Shown: positions 14,027 through 44,421 of the stretch, piece by piece
How the letters are laid out: each line of letters starts with the position of its first letter
Numbering within the stretch: the first letter of the stretch is position 1
Source of the DNA: Paraphysomonas bandaiensis
Lineage: Eukaryota; Protista; Chrysophyceae
Direction: 5' to 3'
DNA: 64,000 nucleotides
Assembly: GCA_965644295.1 (NCBI GenBank)
Contig: CBFFRP010000291.1
Span: 124,001 to 188,000 of the forward strand
Position numbers and translations under genes: made by a program
Notes under the pieces: generated by a model
Databases searched by the model: none
What the model saw: only the letters and a program-made list of their open reading frames with translations
Told to the model about the DNA's origin: nothing

Positions 14027-15519
14027 TTAAACAGAACCATTCTGACTAACTGCGGTATACGGCGACCGCATTTGTAGCTGGATTTCCATAGTCTCTTCTG
14101 GTGAACTGCCATCATCATATCCCCCCCGAATGGGTGACAAAGCTGTCATTTCTCTACTCACCAATGCGTGAGTAGATGCAGCTGGATCTTCCTCATCGTC
14201 TCCAAATGCACGGGAAAACCTATTCACTTTGCCGCTGAAGAATGGACATCTGACCCAATCAGTAGTCGGGCGTTTCTCTCGAATGACGCAGAAGTAAAAT
14301 AACATGGCGCCCACGAATAGGCAAAGGGGTATGAACAAACTCAAAAGAACCGTTCTAGCTGTGGTGCTAGACGACGTATCCTCAGATTTGGTGTATGTGA
14401 CAGCCTTTGACTGGCATACATACTGGTGCTCCTCCTCACAGGGAGTATTCACCCACAGTCCCTCAGATGTAAGGGATACACAATGCTCTAATCCGGTGGG
14501 ATACATCGGATACCCTTCCACCCAGGGTGCATATGACGAAACCTCCTCTTCGGAATGAATCCACCTAAATTCACCATCCTTGTCTTCTCTTAAACCAATA
14601 AACAAACCACTTTCTGAATCCCAAGAGAGGTCATCGTACGTGGCCAGCCAGTCAACAAGGCTAGACGTCAGCTCAACCGAAACTGGAGTGGCTAGCCAGC
14701 CCCCGTCGGATGCGCAGGATGAATTTGCCGCTTCCCAAGTCATTGGAACATTGCCAAGTGAATAACATCCCCCCTGTGCCCAATAAAACCCACGGGTACA
14801 CAGAGGAGTTGGCGCAGGAGTAGGTTGGTGTGTGTAATGGAATTGGGATGGCCTTGGGGTTGGGTATGGTGTTGGGCGTATGGTTGGAATAGCTGAGACA
14901 GGATCTGTCTCACATATATAACGGAGCTGTGTGTCACAGTAGTAGTTGTACCACCCCCCTTTCTTGTTGGTCATCAACACACAGTTGTCTGTTCCAGTTA
15001 TTACAGACGGGGCCCCTTCTACCCAGTTGGTGTACTCAGAGCCACGAGCGGGTGCATACATCCACCTATACAACATCAAAAAAATACAAAGTACAATAAC
15101 CGCTACTTACTCAAATACGTAATCAGACAGATCATAGCGATAAAGTCCGATGTATGGGCCATCGAACCAGGCATCCCATACATAGTACTCGCTCACCCAT
15201 TCATACAGACTATCACTCTCAGACTGAGTTTCTATGGCCACCAACCACCCATTCAAAGCGTGACAGGATCTATTGGCAGAATACCTGCACAAAAAAGTAA
15301 ACATATGAAAGAAAGGAAGATATATCCATACATGAGTGCCACATCATCACTTAAGTAGTAACACGAGTCCCCTACAGAAGTATAGGGCGATGGGCAGAAT
15401 AAACTATCGGTACTATCAGCTGAATCCTGAGAGTCTATAAGCAAGGTGGTATCTTGGTCCACGCTGATAGATGAGACACCGACTAGGCAGCCCAGGAATA
15501 TATATATAACAGAGTGCAT
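14027..15519 (-). CDS. Type I membrane protein with tandem C-type lectin domains
   Basis: Signal peptide, two CTLDs (CY…C…G.LV/LA…(Y/F)IGL…W…Y..W..G.P…NC/HCV…W….C…YICE/YVCQ) joined by a Pro/Thr linker, TM helix VLLSLFIPLCLFVGAMLFYFCVI and a cytoplasmic tail; two introns. Confidence 0.85.
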
Positions 15520-16123
15520 GGATTAATAAATGAACACAAATCAAACACTACTCTCTCTCTCTATATATATATGTATATATGTTACTTTGATTGGAGCATA
15601 TACAATTTGAACGTATAAAGCAATAATGATATATTGGCCAGGAAGGATATCGCTGTTGTCTTGTCGAGTATGATGTTAATGGAATGAATGAACTTCTCCA
15701 ATACAAGCAACCATGTCTATATATACATACCACTCCATATATATATACATACACAGCAGTGCCGAGATATGAATACCCGGGCCAAAGTATACCCCCCTAT
15801 ATTGAACCGTAATGTATGAGGTTTTCAAATACTTTATGTTTTTTTTATATAAAACCATGATTTTAAGATATATTTTGGAGTATTTTTACATTTACAATAT
15901 CTGCTACTGTGTACTTCTATGTATACCGTATAGCTTATACGTGTGTTGTAGGTTGTAGGTATACATCTGTATACAGATACTGTATATAGGCAAGATAGTG
16001 GCTGTATGGTACAGTGCAGTGTATGATATGAGCGAGTAGTTGCTGGTACATGTATGTATGTATCATGATTATATCACAGTCACACCCCACTTGCTCACCC
16101 CCCCGTCTGACATACTCACTAAT

Positions 16124-17146
16124 ATGGGTCAGCGACTCTGTACGGGTCCAGGGAAGCAAAGATCAGCCTCTGATGGGTCAGATAGAGGGTGTCATCACGA
16201 TGACGGCACCTCTCAGTTGATTGTTACGCCTCCAGAAGTATCAGATAAGCAGCACGTGTTAGGGACAAGCCCCCCTCCTTCACCCTCCTCTAGTACACCT
16301 AATCAATCCCTTGATACACATCCTATTACAAGTGTTAATACGGATGATAGTATAAGTGATCAGAATACTGAAGAGGATTTAAGTGACTACACGGCGGTAT
16401 CTCCACCGCACATCACTCCTGCTGAGAAATGTATATTTTCAGAGAATGAAAACACAGTTCATGTCAAACTAATGCCCCATAAACATACGCTATTTTGTGA
16501 AAGAAAGGAACGCGTATGCACAGCTGTGGGTAAAGTACAAGAACGTGAAATGCTGAAAGTAAAAGGGCTAGATGAGGACGCCTCTATAGAAGGGTGCTAT
16601 TGGATACGTTCTGCGGTTGGAGACAGTAAGGCTGGTTACGAGTTTATTCCCGAGTCGGAAGGACTGGACAGATATACTCTGGCATCTGAAGATGCCGGTC
16701 GCTACATATCCTTCCAGCAGACTTATGTGCATCCAGAAAAAGGAGTATCAGTAGCACGCGCGGTGAACTCACTCGGCCCAGTGCTTCCTGGACCGCCTCG
16801 TTTATTAGACCTCAAGATAACGGGCAGTACTAGATGTGGAGGACGGGTCTTTGCTGAAGCAGAATATATAGGCGGTACGCAGGGCCCATCAGAGTATTGG
16901 TGGTTCAAAATCAGATCCGGGAAGCGGGTTCAGCTAGGAGAGCCGCGGGCAATAGATAGCAGCACAGGAGATTTGAACTTTAGAGACAATCCTGCATCGG
17001 ATGATCCCAGGGTATTGGAGATAGGTGAAAATGATGAGGGGTGTGTACTTAAGGTTAAGTGTCGACCTGTTCGCGAGGACGGGTATAAGGGAGAGGTTTT
17101 TACCTCGAAACCATCTGCTGTTATAACAGGGAAAGAAATAAGTTAG
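16124..17146 (+). CDS. Protein with AIR9-type (A9) Ig-like domains
   Basis: YTLASEDAGRYISF and PPRLLDLKITG…G…AEAEYIGGTQGPSEYWWF…DEGCVLKVKCRPVREDG..GE match A9 repeats of the microtubule-associated protein AIR9. Likely start MGQRLC at 16124 (acylation motif). Confidence 0.7.
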   Translation: MGQRLCTGPGKQRSASDGSDRGCHHDDGTSQLIVTPPEVSDKQHVLGTSPPPSPSSSTPNQSLDTHPITSVNTDDSISDQNTEEDLSDYTAVSPPHITPAEKCIFSENENTVHVKLMPHKHTLFCERKERVCTAVGKVQEREMLKVKGLDEDASIEGCYWIRSAVGDSKAGYEFIPESEGLDRYTLASEDAGRYISFQQTYVHPEKGVSVARAVNSLGPVLPGPPRLLDLKITGSTRCGGRVFAEAEYIGGTQGPSEYWWFKIRSGKRVQLGEPRAIDSSTGDLNFRDNPASDDPRVLEIGENDEGCVLKVKCRPVREDGYKGEVFTSKPSAVITGKEIS

Positions 17147-21701: not shown

Positions 21702-24700
21702 CTATCTTGCCTGCGCTACTCTCTTCGTAGGTCTCGTTGTATGACTCACTGTATTCGTTTGCAACCCCTTCACAAAATCGATTTCGTATTTCTCTGGCCT
21801 TCCAGGAAAAGAAATAACTGTCTTACTACTACCTGAACCGCTCCTATAGGTTGCATAGGCACACTCAATCGAGCCTTCGACAAGGCTCTCATACCTTGCC
21901 CATTGCCCACTGGATCCCAAAATATACCACTGGCCAGTAGAACTCAACGATATATCCACCAACGTACGAGAAATCAATCTCTTATAGCCGGTAGACATAT
22001 TAGTTTGTTTACTGTTAACAAAATTAATCTCGTAAAGTTGTGGTCTGTCATCTACGTATCTGACAATAGGTGGTGTTACAACAACCGTTGGCCCTCCGTT
22101 AAATCGCCAGTTTTCATAATAACTTTCCAGGAGTTCATTTATTTCATCCGTGTAAGGCTGCATCTTTACACCATCATCCCAATGCCATCGGTAAGGAGCT
22201 GCATACTCAACAGTAGATATTTTGTTTAACTCAATTGAATTGAGCTTCAAACCTCTGAAACCCATCTCTAGGTCATCAGTACTGACGTCGGCACTCGTAG
22301 TGTGACTTGGTAAAGTACGGATGACAAATTTCGGAGCTGAAGTGATTTCGCCAAAATTAATGACAAGTAGTGGGAAGCAATAAGAGTATGACCAGTCTAA
22401 AGGATTGTTCACCACAAAACAGAAACCTTGCCGGTGAGAAACGGCACTGGATTGAAGAATGTATGCAAGAATGAGACGACTGGATCCTTTCACATAACCG
22501 AGCGACACACTTGGATCCACACCGAAGTACTCTCCAGGGCCGTAAGCCTGCCCCGCCCGTCGCTTCGGATCAAATCCTGTATCACATATGGGGGCAATAG
22601 CATTCTCCGAAGTCCCATGCCATGCAAAAAACCCTTTATCTATATCACTCCCTTTTAAAACAGCACACTTAAATCTTTCATATGCTTGGCAGTTCCACGA
22701 AGGGCCAGGGTTTGGCACCATAGAAGTAATTGGGGGTAGATTGAGGGGCCAGTTCTCACGAGCGAAGTTTTCTGCTTTCGTAATCATATTTTCGATACAC
22801 TTCTCCATGTTGTCAAGGCAATTTAGCAGTACCTGATATTCTGAGCATGACAACCCCTGGTGTCTGCCCGTCCCGTCGAAAGCCACATCACAGTTTACGC
22901 ACACTGTTGAAGAGCACAAAGAACATACTTGAAGAGTATCAGCAAGTAGGAGGATTCCATTGCAGCCAACATTAGGACAAGGACGATAGCAGTATTTATT
23001 TTTGTTAGCAATTAGCTCTGCCTTTACAGCCTTAGAACACACATCGGAGAAGCTGTCAGCGGATAAGATACCTTTGATATCACGAATGTGTACAGGTGTT
23101 AAGCATTTTCCGCACTGCACCCCCGTAATGTCATCAGATACTCTCTGAACTAGACATCGAGCACAATAAGAATGACCGCAAATACTAAAATCAGAGCATG
23201 AAGTAGATTGTTTTCCGCAGTAGGCACACGTTTGAACCGTATTGCTCTGGTCTCCTCCAATTGACTCAATGAGGCTGTCAAGTAATGATGTCACCTCTTG
23301 TATAGTTTCTGGGGGAGTATCTTCAAAAAAGTGCGCAACAATGTGGCATGAAAGCAACCGGTGCTTTATCAAACACTGATCCTTCCACTGCACCTTTAAT
23401 TCCCTGAGTTTGGAGTCACCAACGTTACCCCGTTTAAAGAGGTTGTTTACAGAGGGAGTCATATAAAATGCTATATATCTCCCCTCGAATTTATCGTAGC
23501 ACTCAGCTATATAGTTCATGAGCTCTCCCTGCTGCCTTCTCTGGCCGTGAATTTCTCCTCGAGGGCCTGCCTCCCAGTCTAGGCGCAATCCAAGTGTATC
23601 TACTTTCTCTCTAAGACGAGTGCTCTTTGACAGCTCAGTATAAAATGCTTTCTGCTTTTCAGACGAACCCATGAGCACTATACTTGAAGTAATAGTCCGT
23701 ATTGCAGAAACGGCCTTTGAAATATCCGATGGTGCTCCATCCAGTACCTCCACTTTTGAGGCTTTGCCATTCTTACTAATTTTAAGAACAGATTTCACAG
23801 AAAATCGGGAATTTAACCTCTCTACTATCTGCCGTAAATCAGGAAATAACTCGGGGTATTTAATCTTGACCTCTCCTCTGCCAGATACACGACATGCACA
23901 TTTGAGAAGCTTTGATGCGAAAGTACTTCCCTGTTCATAGAAACGGTCCGCTGCTGAGCTATCAGAAAACACAAGTGATATCACACTTTTGAAAGGAGTG
24001 TCTTTGGAATGTGTAACCAGGAGTTCAGGTGAAACGTTTTTTTGAACAAGCTTGTTCTTCTTGTTTCTAAACATAACTTCGGTGGAAATTGGATTCGACT
24101 GGAAGTATGCAGTCAATTGAACATGTGCCATATCTCTATCCCTCTTTTCTGGGAATGATAAAAAAGCTTCATGTGTACTTGCACCTTCCACACTGACCAC
24201 TACCTTCACTTCAATGATCGACAATCCTTGACGCGACAAAAAAGTAGACAACCAATCTTTGTTGAAATGCCTCGGAAAGTTACGGCAATATATAGAAAAA
24301 CGCCCAGTATTTCTGACAACCAAGTTGGCCTGTAGAAGTCCAAGCGGAGTTAATGTCTTCTTGGTAAAGTCTAGGTCAACATCTGTCTCACTGATGAGAC
24401 TCAGTCGATTTCCAAAACTCGTGTCATTTTGAAGAAAATCATGAACGGCAGTTTCAGAAGTATCTCCAGAGTCATTAAGAATGTATTCAGCTCCTTTCTC
24501 AACAATATATTGAGCTACTTTCTCTGATGCAATAATGATGACTCCACTAAATGTCTCCCTGCCTTCGGTTTCATTATGAAATGCCCTTGCCCACTTAATT
24601 ACGCTCTTGGGTAAAGATTCCTCACCACCAAAAGTGTTTTTCAACCAGACTCGAAAGTCACTAGTTGATTTAATAGGGAGGTCACGAAACTTTATTCTCC

Positions 24701-27700
24701 ACGACGGAGGAATAGCCTGAAGTGAAGATACTTTCAATCCAGCTGTTAACACAGCTTCCATTTGGCATGACCCGACAGCGACACTCACACAAGAACCTAT
24801 GCTGTTGTCAATAATCTCCTTTAACTTATCCGCAATCTCATCCCTGCAGCTCTCACGAAAATTTCTAGCATTGTATATCCGTATACATTTTGTTTTAGCA
24901 TCATATACGCAAACAGACCAGTAATACTCTTTTCGATTTATCTGCTGTCTGTGCCATATTTTGAAACTTTGTGCGATATGGATTCCGACATTGTGTCTTT
25001 CGTATACAATTTCACAAATAGGGTTATTATCCGTACAAGCACTGTGGACCGGGTGAAGACGGTCGCATATATACTCACCAGATGGAAGCTGGGTAACAGA
25101 CAGCGCCACAAAAGTCCTGTAGGGTTCACTTCGTACTTTTTGTAAAAACGTGGAGGAGTTTACAATCCGTGCTCTCATGTCCACTTTAGCAAGGCGAACA
25201 CCGTCAGGGGGATATTCTGGTACCAACACCTCTCCACTTTGATCAGAAAAATACCTTCCTAAACATATCGAGACTGCATAAATATCGTCGATTTCTTTTG
25301 CGTTCTCCTTCTGATCTATTCTGGCCTTCCGTACAATATCTTCCACCGAATGTGAGGTAGACAACACGAAGTCAAGGACTTTGTTGTTAAGGCCTTCCTT
25401 TAAACTGTACTTTACCCTGCAAGGACGACAGCCTTTGACTCGTGAACATTTTCGTTTACAATTAAGACAGTGACTATCTTTGTCACATGCCCCGGCTTGA
25501 TACCATTCCTGAAAGGCACACGCCATAAAAAGTAGATCGGAGTCGTAATTACTCGCTCGAAGAGCCACTCTGCGACGAGCCTCCTCCTTAGCCGCCTTGG
25601 TAGTTCCCCCCATAAAAAAAATATTACCTGGAGCGGATAGTACTGATGCTATAACTGTTGCCAACTTAAGTTTGTCGTAATCACGGTAGCATGCAACAAC
25701 AAAAGCACTGAGACGAGGGTCGAATGGAAGATCAGAAAATAATCGACCTAATTTTGTAGTGGAGTATTCCTTGTTAGTACCCTTTAGGGATCGATTCCAG
25801 CAGATGCATTCCACGCCTTCCAGAAGTCCAATTGAGGAGCTCATTGCTTCTTCTGATGGGGCGGTAATGAAAGGAAAGAGACGGGGATTGTAACCTAATC
25901 GAATAAGTTGGAGGATGACAGAATCAAGCGAGGCCCTAGTAATCTCCGGCTCCATGGTATCTCGCACCAAGTCACAGTCCGCATATAATCGTATACAATG
26001 TCCCGCGCATATACGTCCAGCACGTCCCTTGCGCTGGTCAGCAGATGAACGCGAGATGCGCACGAGTTCAATTACTTCTAGACGGCGGGCCTGATCGTAT
26101 CTTACTTCTTTAGCTAATCCGACATCGATCACAACCGTAACACCTGGGATGGTAAGACTCGTTTCGGCGACATTCGTAGAGAATACGACCATGCGCTTTT
26201 CTTGGTTGGCGGGATCACTGTCAAACAACAGAATGCGATCTTGCTCTTCTGGGGGCAGCGATCCAAAAAGTGGGAAAAGAACAAGTTGTGAGAGATCTGG
26301 GGCGGTAAATGCGAATTCTTTGATAGCCTGTTCTATCTCCGCCTGACCTGGAAGAAACACTAGGACATGACCATTTGTGTGTTCCTCCAAAGCTTCAATC
26401 GTAGCAGGAACCACGTGCTTAGAAATGAGACTTCGAGATGAGATTGATATAGAGGACGAAGGCGGTTTATATTCAAGGGAAACAGGAAAAACACGGCCTG
26501 GAACATCCAGGCTACCTTGTTGGTGTGACCCAAAGAAATCCAAAAATGGTTTTGGATCTATGGTTGCTGACGCTATAACCACGTAAAAGTCGTTTGGACG
26601 CAACGAGCGGATGAGCTTGGCAATACCCAGTACAATGTCTGTGTTGAGGTTGCGCTCGTGTGCTTCGTCAATTATTAGCACCTAATGAAAATGGAAGCAT
26701 GCAATAACATAATAATTGTCGATAGTATTTACAAGGGATATACCTTGATTGATGAGAGCTGACTATCAGCTTGCGACATTTTTACGAGGGCAGCATCAGT
26801 CATTAGCATGATCTCACGCCCTTCAACAGCATTGCCTTTTCCTCCAACGCGGTAGCCAACGTTTCCTCCGACTGAGGTACCGTCATATTCCATACTAATT
26901 CGCTTTGCAATAGAAATAGCAGCCATTACTCGCGGCTGCGTGCATGCTACAATGCCTCCAAAGTACTCCGCGCAATACTGAGGAATCTGAGTAGTTTTGC
27001 CTATATCAAACATGTCATTAAAATTCTATAGCTCTGGCTTATATACTTACCTGAGCCTGTTGCTGCGGTGACCACAACAACTCTTTCTTCCTGAAGACGT
27101 CTACATATCTCCTCTTTCTTAACAAATATTGGCAAAGATGCGGTAACTCTGTCAGCAGTGCGTTGTGTAAGTGACTTGGATGGAGGTACAGCGTTTGATG
27201 AAGCAGGAGCCAGACTGGGGTTCCATCCCATTGGGTGGATGAAGTCACAGTTTGCATTGATACAATCAGAGCGCAATGAGCAGATAGGTGCTCGACCTGG
27301 TGGATGTATACTAGTGCAGTCATATTCAATGCAGTAGACGCCTTCACCACACGCACTCCAACCCGATGGGTGAAGAAACAAGCATTCCTTATTCCAGCAA
27401 AACTGTAGTGATATACATGGTTTACGTCGACTGTACGGGTGATTGGCCTGACATTCAAACTCTATACAATCCTCCCCATCTATACAAGCTATTCGTGATG
27501 GTGGATGTTGATATTGGCATTCAATATCCCAGCATTTCGTACCATATCGACATGGTGCATTTATTTTAAATGAATCCGTGGTCAAGGAAGAAGTCACAGA
27601 ATGGTCGTCGTCATCATTCCATGAGATTTCTGCATCAACAATATCCTGAGCATCTAGATTTACCTTCCTATTGGCCCAGGGATGACCGAATAAGCAGTCC

Positions 27701-28665
27701 GATGCAGGGGTTGGTTGACATGATGGCTTCGTACAATCACAGTGACTGAAGGAACACTCCGAAGCACTTCGCGGACATGATCCTGTACGATAATCTCGAC
27801 ATAGAGGGGGCGTCTTTTTGGCGCTGCCACTGCGGTTCGTACTTTGTGATGCTTGTGACGAAGAATCATAGGATGCCATATTACGAACATTGGAGTGAGA
27901 TGTACGTGAAGGAGATGAGATATTCGATGAAGCCGTGGATATTTTCCTATTGGCCCAGGGATGACCGAATAAGCAGTCCGATGCAGGGGTTGGTTGACAT
28001 GCTGCTTTCGTACAATCACAGTGACTGAAGGAACACTCCGAAGCACTTCGCGGACATGATCCTGTACGATAATCCCGACATAGAGGGGGCGTCTTTTTGG
28101 CGCTGCCACTGCGGTTTGTACTTTGTGATGCTTGTGACGAAGAATCATAGGATGCCATATTACGAACATTGGAGTGAGATGTACGTGAAGGAGATGAGAT
28201 ATTCGATGAAGCCGTGGTTATTTTCCTATTAGCCCAGGGATGACCGAATAAGCAGTCCGATGCAGGGGTTGGTTGACATGCTGCTTTCGTACAATCACAG
28301 TGACTGAAGGAACACTCCGAAGCACTTCGCGGACATGATCCTGTACGATAATCCCGACATAGAGGGGGCGTCTTTTTGGCGCTGCCACTGCGGTTTGTAC
28401 TTTGTGATGCTTGTGACGAAGAATCATAGGATGCCATATTACGAACATTGGAGTGAGATGTACGTGAAGGAGATGAGATATTCGATGAAGCCGTGGTTAT
28501 TTTCCTATTAGCCCAGGGATGACCGAATAAGCAGTCCGATGCAGGGGTTGGTTGACATGCTGCTTTCGTACAATCACAGTGACTGAAGGAACACTCCGAA
28601 GCACTTCGCCGGCATGATCCTGTACGATAATCTCGACATAGAGGGGGTTTCTTTCCAGACTTCAT
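21702..28665 (-). CDS. Giant multidomain protein: CCCH-ZnF array, DEAH helicase, RRM/KH-like, RING-IBR, PARP-like ART, 2x WWE (~2283 aa)
   Basis: Exons 28665-27051, 27000-26744 and 26681-21702 join in frame via 50- and 62-nt GT-AG introns (6852 nt). Helicase motifs ATGSGKTT, CTQPR, DEAH, SAT, LVFLPG, STNVAETSLTIPG, QRKGRAGR; RING at 23228-23103; IBR; ART motifs WHGT…I…GFD…YGPGEYF; two WWE-like repeats ending YEINF/YEIDF…QTN….R. Confidence 0.9.
27663..28647 (-). repeat. Coding tandem repeat, ~3.5 x 279 bp (93 aa; two CCCH fingers per unit)
   Basis: PPLCRDYRTGSC…CSFSHCDCTKAAC…CLFGHPWANRK recurs every 279 bp with only a few substitutions between units. Confidence 0.95.
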
Positions 28666-29962
28666 ATTTATGATATGAATGTCTGAATATAATACGCAGA
28701 TACACTGATGAAGTTATGAAGTGCAGTGTACACACTGATGAAGTTATGAAGTGCAGATATACACACTTATGAAGTGATATGGACTGAAGTGAGGGTCTAA
28801 TCTCAGTATATGTATGTTGGAGGACAAGAAATATGCATTGCTGCATAAAGTGCTGGTCCAGTGTGAGAAAATATCCTGCATATGGCCTTATTTTTCAGTC
28901 ATCATGTCCAATGGCTAGATATCCGGATATCATATATCCGATTCCAGAAATATACAATTTTGGTCTGTATTTTCAGATATAAACACGCATTTTTATAGCG
29001 ATTTTAACTAGAAAACCTAATAATACTGAATTTCTAGCTAAATGAGAGAATTCTAAGCATGCAATGGAATGGTGTTTTAACCCACAGAGAAACAGATCAG
29101 ACTAGAACAGCATGAGGTACATCAACATCTCTACCAATTTTTAGAAAGGTTAAGCTATGGCTTAATGACAATTATTATCAGGATCCGCCCCGCTTTGCCA
29201 TAACATATACTTCTATCTAATGGGAGTAACAGGAAGCCACCGTATCGTTTTACTTTTACATTACCAAACTACGGATGAGAAGCTCTAACGCTTCTTCATG
29301 AATTTTTAAAACGTATATGACTTCAGTCCAACTGATATTACGTGCTATGATGGTTTCCAATGTTCATATTCTCGTGATGCTGATGAAAATACAGTGCTAC
29401 TGCCATACACAAGTTTTCTTTTGGTGATGAAGTAGGTATGTTACGTTGCTTGATTTTGAATTGTATGCGTATACGAAGCATGGTCGAGGCGGATATTCTC
29501 TAGATGAGTTATACTACATGCACTTAATTCGAATTAAGACTAAAGCATATGATTGATTTATGAAGATGCTGTAGTACTCAATGAGAAGTGTTATATGTTA
29601 TACAACAAACTAGTATCTAGTATCAGTTATGGGCATTGTATAAATCATCGCGCATTTGAGAATGCCGTGCATAAATTCTAATTTACTACAACGTCTAGTG
29701 ATACATGAGAGCTGTTTGATGCTTATTCGCTCAGCTTATAAATGATAAATGCAAAGATTATTTCAACGGTACTCTAATTAGAAATATGTAGCTCGACTCC
29801 CCTGGTAGCATTTCATTCGTCAACTATTCTAAGCGTAACCTTACTACGAATGCATCTATGCTTCAGGCCTAATATATATCACTAAAGCAGCGAAGCTAAT
29901 TTGATGTTATGGTGATTACTTGAACCCAATGCCTACAGAAGCCGATGTTGACGAAAGATATC

Positions 29963-43164: not shown

Positions 43165-44421
43165 CTATACGAAAGATGGACATGGAGGGTCCTGTGAACG
43201 AACCCACTGCAGAACATCCAAGTGTCCTCCATCAGCAGCAGCAGTGCAAGTACATTTACTCCATGGACATGGAGGGTCCTGTGAACGAAGCCACTTCAGA
43301 ACATCCAACTGTCCACCCTGTGCAGCATTACTGCAAGTATATTCATTCCATGGACATGGAGGGTCCTGTGAACGAAGCCACTTCAGTACATCCAACTGTC
43401 CACATCTAGCAGCAGAACAGCAAGAATCTGAATTCCATGGACATGGAGGGTCCTGTGAACGAAGCCATTTCAAAACATACATGCGACCACACTCTGAAGC
43501 TGCTTCACAGCTCCATTCATTCCATGGGCATGGAGGGTCCTGTGAACGAAGCCACTTCAGAACATCCAAGTGTCCATTTCTTGCAGCATCATGGCAAGTA
43601 TATATATTCCATGGACATGGAGGGTCCTGTGAACGAACCCACTTCAGAACATCCAAGTGTCCACATCTAGCAGCACCAGTGCAAGTCCATTCATCCCATG
43701 GGCATGGAGGGTCCTGTGAACGAAGCCACTTCAGAACATTCAAGTGTCCACCTTTTGCAGCAGAACAGCAAGTATATACACCCCATGGACATGGAGGGTC
43801 CTGTGAACGAAGCCACTTCAGAACATCCAAATGTCCTCCCTCTGCAGCAAAATGGCAAGTATCTGAATTCCATGGACATGGAGGGTCATGTGAACGAAGC
43901 CACTTCAGAACATCCAAGTGTCCACCCTCTGCAGCATTACTGCAAGTCTCTTCATCCCATCGACATGGAGGGTCCTGTGAACGAAGCCATCCCAGAATAG
44001 TTAAGTGTTCACCCTCCGCAGTAGCCCCCCAAGTCTCTTCATACCATGGACATGGAGGGTCCTGTGTATGTGTATCTATATGTGTGTATATGTGTTTCAT
44101 CTGCTGTAGTCTGCCGTATTGTGCACATGTATCCATTAGTTTGGTGTGTGGGCAGCCCATAGACAGAGCCCATGAGACCATTGAGTTGGTCATACAGTAG
44201 TGAGATGCATGTGACTCAAGTCTCTCTCTGCTCTTATCAGTGTAGACTATCTCGTGAAATCTCTTACTAGTCATGACCACAGGAAGGAGAGCTGCGTATG
44301 GGATCATAGAGATGATGAGACGCAGCACATCATCATTAAGAACAGATATACTCGACTTATATGAACACTGATTCATAGTGTATATGAGTCTGATGGAGTG
44401 TTTAAGGTGAGATGAGTTCAT
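43165..44421 (-). CDS. F-box-like + ankyrin-repeat protein (algal/giant-virus type), intronless
   Basis: N-terminal ISVLNDDVLRLIISMI…VVMTSKRFH (F-box-like), then ten 29-aa (87-bp) repeats CPWxxxxCxxAAxxGHLDVLKWLRSQDPP. Confidence 0.88.
   Translation of the reverse strand: MNSSHLKHSIRLIYTMNQCSYKSSISVLNDDVLRLIISMIPYAALLPVVMTSKRFHEIVYTDKSRERLESHASHYCMTNSMVSWALSMGCPHTKLMDTCAQYGRLQQMKHIYTHIDTHTQDPPCPWYEETWGATAEGEHLTILGWLRSQDPPCRWDEETCSNAAEGGHLDVLKWLRSHDPPCPWNSDTCHFAAEGGHLDVLKWLRSQDPPCPWGVYTCCSAAKGGHLNVLKWLRSQDPPCPWDEWTCTGAARCGHLDVLKWVRSQDPPCPWNIYTCHDAARNGHLDVLKWLRSQDPPCPWNEWSCEAASECGRMYVLKWLRSQDPPCPWNSDSCCSAARCGQLDVLKWLRSQDPPCPWNEYTCSNAAQGGQLDVLKWLRSQDPPCPWSKCTCTAAADGGHLDVLQWVRSQDPPCPSFV

What the first reader, a model, noticed from the sequence alone, without database searches (positions are those of the whole stretch)
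21702..28665. Single-chain RNA sensor / ADP-ribosyltransferase / ubiquitin-ligase candidate: CCCH13-DEAH-RRM/KH-RING-IBR-PARP-WWE2
Seen: three exons join into ~2283 aa with 13 CCCH fingers, all DEAH helicase motifs intact, RRM/KH-like segments (~24740-23690), RING-IBR, a PARP-type ART core and two WWE domains. Known: plant DEAH11/12 helicases carry RBR modules. Animal ZAP/PARP12 (CCCH-WWE-ART), PARP14 (RRM-KH-macro-WWE-ART) and Deltex/RNF146 (WWE+RING) spread these modules over separate antiviral and ADP-ribose-dependent ubiquitination proteins. Inference: this protist fuses RNA recognition, RNA unwinding, an ADP-ribose writer, an ADP-ribose reader and an E3 module in one chain, suggesting an innate-immune or RNA-surveillance effector. 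I do not know a characterised protein with this architecture.
Basis: partly seen in the sequence, partly recalled or inferred. Interest (0 to 1): 0.9.

Follow-up and report, generated by a model that had tools for sequence, protein, structure and literature searches.

The report
Helicase fused to ADP-ribosyltransferase and RING
A marine protist expresses one 2,283-residue protein that joins RNA-binding zinc fingers, an RNA helicase, half of a ubiquitin-ligase module, an ADP-ribose-writing enzyme and two ADP-ribose-reading domains; the same layout recurs in distant eukaryotes and I found no study of it.

Summary
A minus-strand, three-exon gene (28665..21702) encodes 2,283 aa. An RNA-type contig has both GT-AG introns (50 and 62 nt) removed exactly; a DNA contig keeps them.

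Profile and structure searches confirm:
- five Nab2-type CCCH fingers, plus four 93-aa repeats with MBNL-like fingers
- a complete DEAH/RHA helicase
- one true RRM among ferredoxin-like domains
- RING1-IBR closest to HOIL-1
- a PARP12/15-like ART fold
- a Deltex/ZAP-like tandem WWE pair

- KH is not supported.
- RING2/Rcat is absent family-wide, so this is not a true RBR ligase. The ART domain sits where Rcat would be.
- The ART triad reads H-Y-C and never has Glu, which predicts mono-ADP-ribosylation at most.
- The fusion is not peculiar to this protist. Collinear relatives occur in bdelloid rotifers, Pelomyxa, Aphanomyces and Paratrimastix; about 80 clusters at 50% identity share the family-specific middle region.

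No paper describing the architecture was found. The likely function is an RNA-guided, perhaps poly(A)-guided, helicase that couples ADP-ribosylation to E2 recruitment. An immune role is untested.

The parts
21702..28665 (-). Whole coding gene: 3 exons, 2,283 aa, stop codon at 21702-21704
   Evidence: ORFs and splice reading. Spliced RNA contig, with an unspliced DNA contig as control. Collinear homologues.
27051..28665 (-). Exon 1: CCCH fingers and the start of the helicase, up to the first half of Walker A
27001..27050 (-). Intron 1, 50 nt, GT-AG
   Evidence: Sequence. Removed in the X8 RNA contig and retained in the X1 DNA contig.
26744..27000 (-). Exon 2: completes GSGKT; carries helicase motifs Ia (TQPRV) and Ib (TDAAL)
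26682..26743 (-). Intron 2, 62 nt, GT-AG
   Evidence: Sequence. Removed in RNA contigs of X8 and X13 and retained in the X1 DNA contig.
21702..26681 (-). Exon 3: DEAH motif through to the C-terminal WWE2 and the stop codon
27665..28654 (-). 279-bp tandem repeat (3.5 copies by TRF, 98% identical). It encodes four 93-aa units, each with one MBNL-like CCCH finger and one atypical CCCH pattern.
   Evidence: TRF; regular expression; Pfam zf-CCCH in 4 stretches; MBNL1 E 0.004. The copy number is not verified by short-read assemblies.
27235..27552 (-). Five Nab2-type CCCH fingers (C-x5-C-x4-C-x3-H), aa 372-477
   Evidence: Nab2 ZnF5-7 (2LHN, 5L2L) at E 6e-12. Of 37 relatives with an N-terminus, 22 carry such arrays upstream of the helicase.
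24996..27135 (-). DEAH/RHA helicase module, aa 511-1186 (spans both introns): RecA1, RecA2, winged-helix/HA2 and an OB-like end. Motifs present: GSGKT, TQPRV, TDAAL, DEAH, SAT, FLPG, TNVAETS, QRKGRAGR.
   Evidence: Motif positions. Helicase_C at 47.7 bits. HrpA E 4e-57 and DHX15/Prp43 E 1e-54. The OB-like strands come only from the AF2 model.
23457..24995 (-). Family-specific middle region, aa 1187-1699: a string of ferredoxin-like beta-alpha-beta domains
   Evidence: AF2 model, pLDDT 82. Foldseek hits to multi-RRM, ACT and KH proteins, all with low TM scores. The profile finds 79 clusters at E<=1e-30.
23997..24308 (-). RRM, aa 1416-1519
   Evidence: Pfam RRM_1 at 18.7 bits, below its cut-off. 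Family profile against PABP at E 1.4e-11. VIA Z 11.2, rmsd 2.3 A over 79 residues against Pes4 RRM4.
23103..23228 (-). RING1 (C3HC4), aa 1776-1817
   Evidence: Seven of the eight ligands are invariant and the eighth is at least 90% conserved across 28 sequences. The profile matches HOIL-1 RING1-IBR at E 5e-10. Foldseek hit to 7yui at E 8e-6.
22845..22979 (-). IBR (C6HC), aa 1859-1903. No RING2/Rcat follows.
   Evidence: Conserved C6HC pattern, with no further conserved Zn ligands downstream. Matches to the HOIL-1 and HOIP IBR. IBR Pfam hits in the relatives P0036, P0038 and P0045.
22347..22808 (-). PARP-type ART domain, aa 1916-2069. Triad His1979 (22617-22619), Tyr2009 (22527-22529) and Cys2045 (22419-22421). 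The acceptor loop is very short.
   Evidence: Pfam PARP at 25.2 bits in hmmscan and 28.4 bits in the six-frame search. Profile against PARP12 at E 8e-9. VIA Z 14.0, rmsd 2.8 A over 136 residues against PARP15. Triad tallies.
21960..22202 (-). WWE1, aa 2118-2198
   Evidence: Pfam WWE at 58.8 bits, 2 stretches. DTX1 tandem WWE at E 1.8e-13. ZAP WWE1-WWE2 by Foldseek at E 1.8e-7.
21711..21944 (-). WWE2, aa 2204-2281, at the C-terminus

Best explanation
This is a real, expressed, single-copy gene for a 2,283-aa member of an uncharacterised eukaryotic protein family.

SHOWN. The protein consists, in order, of:
- an N-terminal CCCH array: lineage-specific 93-aa repeats followed by five Nab2-type fingers
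- a complete DEAH/RHA helicase
- ferredoxin-like domains that include one RRM
- a C-terminal cassette of RING1, IBR, ART, WWE and WWE

The ART domain has the PARP12/15 fold. Its NAD+-pocket residues (His-Gly, Tyr, Ser, Tyr) are invariant in the 28 aligned relatives and at least 93% conserved over 92 family ART domains. A conserved Cys sits where poly-ADP-ribose polymerases have the catalytic Glu.

INFERRED mechanism:
1. The Nab2-type fingers and the RRM bind single-stranded RNA, possibly polyadenosine.
2. The helicase loads on a 3' single-stranded tail and translocates 3'->5', remodelling the RNA-protein complex.
3. The ART domain, which lacks Glu, transfers single ADP-ribose units. The target could be itself, an RNP protein or an RNA end.
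4. The tandem WWE pair binds the ADP-ribose product and holds the enzyme on marked substrate.
5. RING1-IBR recruits a ubiquitin-charged E2, so that ADP-ribose-marked material is ubiquitylated. This would resemble RNF146 or Deltex, but inside one chain.

Whether the pathway serves routine mRNA surveillance or defence against viruses and transposons is not decided by the data.
For: - Splicing and expression.
- Collinear full-length relatives (33-36% identity from about aa 370 to 2278) in rotifers, Amoebozoa and an oomycete; the Paratrimastix relative aligns in two blocks.
- Nab2 ZnF5-7 match at E 6e-12. Nab2-type arrays lie upstream of the helicase in 22 of 37 relatives.
- Helicase motifs and HrpA/DHX15 similarity.
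- RRM.
- RING1-IBR.
- ART fold at Z 14.0.
- Tandem WWE with conserved Y-x8-Q-x8-R pocket positions, aligned to DTX1.
- The genome also encodes macro-PARPs and other WWE proteins, so an ADP-ribose system exists in this organism.
- The in-trans precedent of ZAP (CCCH-WWE-ART) working with the DEAH helicase DHX30: PMC4987287.
Against: - No biochemical data exist for any family member.
- There is no RING2/Rcat. An RBR-type RING1 alone is not known to drive ubiquitin transfer, so the E3 step may not happen as proposed.
- The third triad residue (Cys) was placed by strand register and by my recollection of PARP14/15 numbering, not by a residue-level structural superposition.
- The acceptor loop is much shorter than in human PARPs, which could mean altered or lost transferase activity.
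- Poly(A) specificity is inferred only from similarity to Nab2.
- The middle 500 aa has no assigned function.
Confidence: 0.55

Rival explanations
1. One reading: a dedicated innate-immune effector. It would sense viral or transposon RNA through the CCCH fingers and helicase, then ADP-ribosylate and ubiquitylate viral or host factors, as a single-chain equivalent of ZAP with DHX30 and TRIM25.
For: - Module-by-module resemblance to ZAP/PARP12 and to the ZAP-DHX30 partnership.
- Patchy distribution, with several paralogues in bdelloid rotifers and variable N-terminal additions.
- A recently expanded, 98%-identical finger repeat in this species.
- Some paralogues have degenerate ART triads, as ZAP does.
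Against: - Single copy in this genome.
- Long-range collinearity with strongly conserved catalytic residues across supergroups suggests a conserved core function rather than an arms race.
- Present in unperturbed poly(A) metatranscriptomes.
- No data on induction, positive selection or virus interaction.
- The fingers are Nab2-type, associated with poly(A) binding, and are not ZAP-type CpG readers.
Confidence: 0.25
2. The ART domain is a pseudo-enzyme, like ZAP/PARP13 or plant RCD1. On this view the protein is a helicase scaffold that only reads ADP-ribose made by other PARPs, through its WWE pair, and recruits an E2.
For: - No catalytic Glu anywhere in the family.
- Shortened acceptor loop.
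- The Pfam PARP score is at or under the cut-off for this protein.
- The genome has at least seven other PARP loci that could write the mark.
Against: The NAD+-pocket residues His-Gly, Tyr, Ser and Tyr are invariant in 28 sequences and at least 93% conserved over 92. Known inactive PARPs (ZAP Y-Y-V, PARP9 Q-Y-T; my own knowledge) have lost the His. Only a few paralogues here show such loss (Y-Y-G, Y-T-G), which implies that the majority are under selection for NAD+ binding.
Confidence: 0.15
3. The gene model is an artefact. On this view the CCCH exon and the helicase/ART exons belong to separate genes, or the open reading frame is a chance read-through.
For: No transcript contig crosses the 279-bp repeat array, so the first ~330 aa are linked to the rest only by the uninterrupted ORF.
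Against: - One RNA contig joins exon 3, exon 2 and exon 1 up to 27694. That covers all five Nab2-type fingers.
- Walker A is only reconstituted by splicing.
- Relatives carry CCCH arrays and the helicase in one chain.
- There is no stop codon from 28665 to 27051.
Confidence: 0.03

Closest known systems
ZAP (PARP13) and PARP12: vertebrate CCCH-WWE-ART proteins
   Same: CCCH RNA-binding fingers, a tandem WWE pair (ZAP ZnF5-WWE1-WWE2 is the best Foldseek hit, E 1.8e-7) and a PARP12-like ART (E 8e-9; Z 13.5) in one chain. ZAP works with the DEAH helicase DHX30 in trans.
   Different: - The domain order is reversed: WWE follows the ART here and precedes it in ZAP and PARP12.
- The fingers are Nab2-type and not ZAP-type.
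- The helicase, the RRM and RING1-IBR are in cis.
- The triad is H-Y-C, against H-Y-I in PARP12 and Y-Y-V in ZAP (my own knowledge).
'Helicase / Plant I' RBR subfamily (plant DEAH11/DEAH12), Marin 2010, PMC2904391
   Same: A DEAH helicase followed by a RING1-IBR module in a very long protein. That subfamily is described as ancient and present in both unikonts and bikonts.
   Different: Those proteins have the full RING1-IBR-RING2 supradomain and no ART or WWE. Here RING2 is absent and an ART-WWE-WWE unit follows the IBR. Direct homology could not be tested, because the search with the RING-IBR region came back blank.
HOIL-1 (RBCK1) RBR ligase
   Same: Closest solved RING1-IBR, including the helix after the IBR (E 5e-10; Foldseek E 8e-6).
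   Different: HOIL-1 has a catalytic RING2 (Rcat) cysteine domain. This family has none.
Deltex (DTX1/2/4), DTX3L-PARP9 and RNF146: ADP-ribose-dependent ubiquitin ligases
   Same: WWE reader(s) combined with a RING in one protein. The tandem WWE here is most similar by sequence to the DTX1 pair (E 1.8e-13).
   Different: Those proteins use a canonical RING (with a DTC domain in Deltex) and depend on a separate PARP. Here the RING is of the RBR RING1 type, and the writer is in the same chain.
PARP14 and PARP10: RRM-containing mono-ARTs
   Same: RRM, WWE and an H-Y-hydrophobic ART (Z 13.7 to PARP14 and 13.2 to PARP10).
   Different: This protein has no macrodomains or UIMs, and adds a helicase and RING1-IBR.
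DHX15/Prp43 and bacterial HrpA: DEAH/RHA helicases
   Same: The helicase core and winged-helix/HA2 region (E 4e-57 to HrpA, 1e-54 to DHX15).
   Different: Those helicases have no zinc-finger array, RING, ART or WWE. No G-patch partner is implied here.
Nab2 / ZC3H14: polyadenosine RNA-binding proteins
   Same: Tandem C-x5-C-x4-6-C-x3-H fingers (E 6e-12 to Nab2 ZnF5-7).
   Different: Nab2 has no enzymatic domains.

Membership tests
PARP / ARTD family (PF00644) | ART fold of the diphtheria-toxin/PARP type | tested here: met
   VIA Z 14.0, rmsd 2.8 A over 136 residues, spanning the whole PARP15 catalytic domain. Profile E 8e-9 to PARP12.
PARP / ARTD family (PF00644) | Pfam gathering score (26.7 bits) | tested here: inconclusive
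   25.2 bits in hmmscan of exon 3 and 28.4 bits in the six-frame genome search. Relatives reach 30.7-35.2 bits.
PARP / ARTD family (PF00644) | NAD+-binding His-Gly, Tyr and Ser-x-x-Tyr signature | tested here: met
   H, G, Y, S and Y are invariant in 28 sequences. Over 92 domains the counts are 89/92 H, 85/89 Y and 85/87 S. They align to the PARP12 residues HGT, YF and SHHY.
Poly-ADP-ribose polymerases (H-Y-E class) | Catalytic Glu at the start of beta-5 | tested here: not met
   The position is Cys in 75 of 83 domains and never Glu. Its placement rests on strand register in the AF2 model and on my knowledge of PARP14/15.
RBR ubiquitin ligases | RING1 (C3HC4) followed by IBR (C6HC) | tested here: met
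   Conserved ligand pattern. HOIL-1 and HOIP matches.
RBR ubiquitin ligases | RING2/Rcat domain with the catalytic cysteine | tested here: not met
   No conserved Zn-ligand pattern lies between the IBR and the ART in 28 aligned sequences. Two helices follow the IBR and then the ART begins.
WWE domain proteins (PF02825) | Score above the Pfam cut-off; two copies in tandem | tested here: met
   58.8 bits against a 21.1-bit cut-off, 2 stretches. DTX1 tandem WWE at E 1.8e-13.
WWE domain proteins (PF02825) | ADP-ribose / iso-ADP-ribose binding | not testable with these tools
   The pocket positions Tyr, Gln and Arg are invariant or nearly so in both copies. Binding itself needs ITC or a pull-down.
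DEAH/RHA helicases | Motifs I, Ia, Ib, II (DEAH), III, IV, V and VI | tested here: met
   All were located in the spliced protein.
DEAH/RHA helicases | C-terminal winged-helix, HA2/ratchet and OB domains | tested here: inconclusive
   Alignments to DHX15 and Prp22 run to exon-3 residues 382-454. HA2_N Pfam is seen in the relative P0055. The OB-like strands come only from the AF2 model, and this protein gives no Pfam HA2 or OB hit.
Nab2-type CCCH fingers (PF14608) | C-x5-C-x4-6-C-x3-H tandem array similar to Nab2 ZnF5-7 | tested here: met
   E 6e-12 to 2LHN and 5L2L. Pfam zf-CCCH_2 scores only 16.8 bits, below its cut-off.
RRM (PF00076) | beta-alpha-beta-beta-alpha-beta fold with RNP motifs | tested here: met
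   Profile E 1.4e-11. Z 11.2, rmsd 2.3 A. The single sequence is below the Pfam cut-off at 18.7 bits against 20.7.
KH domain | KH fold or GXXG motif | tested here: inconclusive
   There is only one weak multi-domain Foldseek hit (3n89, E 1.7e-4, TM 0.14-0.21), and no sequence or profile hit. The single domains were not folded separately.
ZAP/PARP12 subfamily | Domain order CCCH - WWE - ART | tested here: not met
   The order here is CCCH - helicase - RRM - RING1-IBR - ART - WWE-WWE.
Helicase RBR subfamily (DEAH11/12) | Orthology of the helicase and RBR parts with the plant proteins | not tested
   The search with the RING-IBR region was blank. No plant sequence was retrieved for comparison.

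The most novel reading that the evidence does not exclude
RING1-IBR-ART is a new kind of hybrid catalytic unit. In it the ART domain has taken the place of the RBR Rcat domain. The E2~ubiquitin held by RING1 would be delivered to the ART active site, which carries a family-conserved Cys at the position of the PARP catalytic Glu. The enzyme would then make ubiquitin-ADP-ribose hybrid marks on RNA ends or RNP proteins. That would make it a single-chain, helicase-guided counterpart of the DTX3L-PARP9/PARP14 system, and an ancient one in eukaryotes.
Probability: 0.1. Interest if true: 0.9.

Novelty: new variant of a known kind. Interest (0 to 1): 0.62.

Why it matters
ADP-ribosylation and ubiquitylation are known to talk to each other in animals through separate proteins: RNF146 with tankyrase, Deltex with PARP9/14, and ZAP with TRIM25 and DHX30.

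This family puts an RNA-binding finger array, a processive RNA helicase, the writer, two readers and an E2-docking module into one polypeptide. That layout is kept from stramenopiles to amoebae, metamonads and rotifers. This implies an old, still unstudied RNA-linked ADP-ribose/ubiquitin pathway.

The family also offers natural experiments on three questions:
- What can an RBR-type RING1-IBR do without its catalytic RING2?
- What does an H-Y-Cys ART domain catalyse?
- Do mono-ARTs act on RNA in vivo?

The family is absent from the standard model organisms, which may explain why it has been overlooked.

Tried and rejected
- **Middle-region homologue search.** The search for homologous proteins with residues 506-1160 gave only 3 hits, because the region is too divergent for the word index. 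It was replaced by an exhaustive profile search.
- **RING1-IBR homologue search.** The search with residues 1125-1310 gave nothing. This is uninformative, and the link to plant DEAH11/12 stays open.
- **Single-sequence PDB search of the C-terminus.** It gave only marginal hits. Family profiles were needed.
- **The protein-atlas search on the C-terminal cassette.** The best score was 0.78, to a mollusc PARP cluster. This is a lead only.
- **The search of earlier findings.** There are no earlier notes near this place.
- **Naming the organism.** Exact look-up of eight neighbouring ORFs found one (P0181), in JGI/IMG, MMETSP and EukProt, but without a name. I can say only that this is a marine, MMETSP-sampled protist with a 62.6-Mb assembly.
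- **KH domains.** Considered and not supported.
- **A paralogue family in this genome.** Rejected, because there is a single locus.
- **Synteny with the relative on L002.** Rejected. The neighbour there is a Macro+helicase gene, whereas here it is an AIR9-like ORF.
- **Papers.** Seven completed literature searches, after one rejected query, found no paper describing the architecture. The PARP survey of Perina et al. 2014 never mentions helicases.
- **Handling of sequences.** The spliced full-length protein was never typed into a tool; its exons were searched by reference.


Full report
**1. Is it there?**

The minus strand between 28665 and 21702 holds three open frames. They join through two short GT-AG introns, 27050..27001 (50 nt) and 26743..26682 (62 nt). 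The Walker A motif GSGKT exists only after exon 1 is joined to exon 2. The sequence "SIK|VLIIDEAH" spans the second junction.

Public data support both junctions:
- A 6,107-nt RNA-type contig (run X8) lies on at least 23000..27694 with exactly these 62 and 50 nt skipped.
- A contig from a poly(A) marine metatranscriptome (X13) also lacks the 62-nt intron.
- A 6,027-nt DNA contig (X1) runs through both introns unspliced.

By its own numbering, the X8 contig extends about 1.5 kb below 23000, past the stop codon. So the five Nab2-type fingers, the helicase and everything downstream lie on one transcript.

No short-read assembly, DNA included, crosses the 279-bp tandem repeat at 27665-28654 (3.5 copies, 98% identical). 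The four 93-aa repeat units are therefore tied to the rest only by the uninterrupted ORF. Their number rests on the window's assembly.

**2. What are the parts?**

*N-terminus.* A regular expression finds 13 CCCH patterns.
- Pfam zf-CCCH supports one finger per 93-aa repeat (4 stretches). These resemble Muscleblind fingers weakly (E 0.004).
- The second pattern in each repeat has no profile support.
- The five fingers at aa 372-477 (C-x5-C-x4-C-x3-H) match Nab2 zinc fingers 5-7 at E 6e-12. In Nab2 that unit is known for binding polyadenosine RNA (my own knowledge).

*Helicase.* Motifs I, Ia, Ib, II (DEAH), III, IV, V and VI are all present. The C-terminal half of the core and the winged-helix/HA2 region match HrpA (E 4e-57) and DHX15/Prp43 (E 1e-54).

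*Middle region.* A family alignment (A2) gives an AlphaFold model with pLDDT 82. The model is a string of beta-alpha-beta domains.
- One is a true RRM: profile E 1.4e-11 to PABP, and Z 11.2 with rmsd 2.3 A over 79 residues to Pes4 RRM4.
- The others give only generic ferredoxin-like matches (multi-RRM, ACT, and one weak KH entry).
- KH is therefore not confirmed.

*C-terminal cassette.* A 28-sequence alignment (A1) shows a C3HC4 RING and a C6HC IBR, with every zinc ligand invariant or at least 90% conserved. The profile matches HOIL-1 RING1-IBR (E 5e-10), PARP12 (E 5e-8) and the DTX1 tandem WWE (E 1.8e-13). The model has pLDDT 86.5. Its matches are:
- ZAP WWE1-WWE2, DTX1, HOIL-1L and PARP12/10/14/15 by Foldseek
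- the complete PARP15 catalytic domain at Z 14.0, rmsd 2.8 A over 136 residues

**3.

First, there is no RING2/Rcat in any aligned member. After the IBR come two helices and then the ART domain. The module therefore fails the defining test of an RBR ligase. The ART domain occupies the place where the catalytic RING2 sits in RBRs.

Second, the ART active site.
- His-Gly, the nicotinamide-stacking Tyr and the Ser-x-x-Tyr motif are invariant in 28 sequences. They align with the corresponding PARP12 residues.
- The residue at the start of beta-5, where PARP1 has Glu988 and PARP14/15 have Leu, is Cys (C2045).
This set holds relatives only; the window's own protein is not in it. Over the 92 ART domains it found, the tallies are H 89/92, Y 85/89 and C 75/83, and never Glu.
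- A few paralogues are degenerate (Y-Y-G, Y-T-G), reminiscent of ZAP.
- The placement of the third residue rests on strand order in the model and on my recollection of PARP14/15 numbering. It does not rest on a residue-level superposition, so I hold it with moderate confidence.
- The loop between beta-4 and beta-5 (the acceptor loop) is only about three residues long.

The prediction is NAD+ binding with mono-ADP-ribosylation at most.

**4. How widespread is it?**

The search with the C-terminal region found 41 proteins. Local BLAST shows many of them collinear with the query from about aa 370 to 2278 at 33-36% identity. Named sources are:
- the bdelloid rotifers Rotaria and Adineta
- Pelomyxa schiedti (Amoebozoa)
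- Aphanomyces stellatus (an oomycete)
- Paratrimastix pyriformis
- two unclassified eukaryotes
- EukProt transcriptomes

The closest relatives (45-53% identity) are unnamed environmental sequences.

An exhaustive profile search with the family-specific middle region gave 79 clusters at 50% identity with E<=1e-30, and 196 with E<=1e-10, out of 1.84 billion representatives. The family is therefore real but rare.

Of 37 members with a preserved N-terminus, 22 carry Nab2-type finger arrays upstream of the helicase. This further supports the one-gene model.

Variants exist:
- some lack the WWE pair (P0035-P0040)
- one has a La domain (P0052)
- one apparently has a topoisomerase IA in place of the helicase (P0032)

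In this genome (62.6 Mb, 669 contigs) the gene is single-copy. The genome also has at least seven other PARP loci, three of them next to macrodomains, and other WWE loci.

**5. What does it most likely do?**

The anatomy is shown; the mechanism below is inferred.
1. The finger array and the RRM bind single-stranded RNA, possibly poly(A).
2. The DEAH/RHA motor translocates 3'->5' and remodels the RNP.
3. The ART domain adds single ADP-ribose units to itself, an RNP protein or an RNA end.
4. The tandem WWE pair binds the product.
5. RING1-IBR docks a charged E2, so that marked material is ubiquitylated.

Precedents in trans are ZAP with DHX30 (PMC4987287), and RNF146 and Deltex for ADP-ribose-dependent ubiquitylation (my own knowledge).

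What is uncertain:
- whether a RING1-IBR without Rcat can promote any ubiquitin transfer
- whether the ART is active
- whether the pathway is housekeeping RNA surveillance or defence

For defence: the patchy distribution, the paralogue expansion in rotifers, the variable N-termini and the fresh repeat expansion here.

Against defence: the single copy here, the long-range collinearity with strongly conserved catalytic residues, the Nab2-type fingers in place of ZAP-type ones, and the gene's presence in ordinary poly(A) metatranscriptomes.

**6. Comparison with what is known, and novelty**

The protein is a PARP-family ART by fold and NAD+ signature, but it is not a poly-ADP-ribose polymerase. 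It carries WWE, RRM, DEAH/RHA and Nab2-type modules by test. It is not an RBR ligase, because RING2 is missing. It is not a ZAP/PARP12 orthologue, because the domain order differs.

Marin (PMC2904391) described an ancient 'Helicase' RBR subfamily, the plant DEAH11/12 group, with a full RBR. Whether the present family is its derivative, with ART-WWE replacing RING2, could not be tested.

Seven literature searches found no description of this architecture. The broad PARP survey of Perina et al. never mentions helicases. Databases label the relatives only automatically, for example as 'RNA helicase', 'Poly [ADP-ribose] polymerase' or 'HrpA-like'.

I rate it a new variant of known kinds. All the modules are familiar. 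What is undescribed is the conserved combination, and in particular the RING1-IBR-ART(H-Y-C)-WWE-WWE cassette.

**7. Verdict**

Interest is moderate to high (0.62).

The boldest reading not excluded is that RING1-IBR-ART forms a hybrid ubiquitin/ADP-ribose catalytic unit. I give that about 10%.

Noticed in passing
window 28702-28775: A 30-bp tandem repeat (2.4 copies, 93% matches) lies directly upstream of the start codon, in the presumed 5' UTR or promoter. RNA-type contigs show no depth above about 28372, whereas the DNA run covers the region.
   Followed up: no
L002:10750-15771 (ENA contig ctg580618 of sample ERZ25071330): In the environmental relative that carries P0005, the convergent neighbour is a gene of more than 2,180 aa with Macro, DEAD and Helicase_C domains. 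This is a second helicase linked to ADP-ribose next to the family member. It is not syntenic with the window.
   Followed up: partly
P0032 (1,682 aa; JGI/ENA, 6.6-kb contig): A bacterial-type topoisomerase IA domain (PF01131, 82 bits) is followed by the same RING1-IBR-ART-WWE-WWE cassette. If this is not a gene-calling fusion, the cassette is a mobile module that pairs with different nucleic-acid enzymes.
   Followed up: partly
G000 contigs C321:10264-12190, C330:12989-14887, C620:12064-13994: Three loci carry a macrodomain next to a PARP catalytic domain (macro-PARP type). C321 and C330 score almost identically and may be allelic contigs or recent duplicates.
   Followed up: no
window 14027-15079 (-) and 16040-17146 (+): Downstream neighbours of the gene: an ORF with two C-type lectin domains (79 bits) and an ORF with an AIR9-type Ig domain (61 bits).
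   Followed up: no
window 43165-44421 (-) and 43244-44200 (+): A 418-aa ankyrin-repeat ORF is overlapped on the opposite strand by a 318-aa ORF. The antisense ORF is probably a by-product of repeat composition.
   Followed up: no
P0061, P0064, P0068, P0074 (family members): Some paralogues have degenerate ART triads (Y-F-C, Y-T-G, Y-Y-G, H-T-G). This suggests repeated loss of NAD+ binding within the family, as in vertebrate ZAP.
   Followed up: partly
window 25536, 25953, 27443, 28075, 28218, 28231: Only six single-base differences separate the window from the contigs of 'organism B' (run X8) over the part of the gene those contigs cover. The differently labelled organisms A and B are therefore near-identical at this locus.
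   Followed up: no
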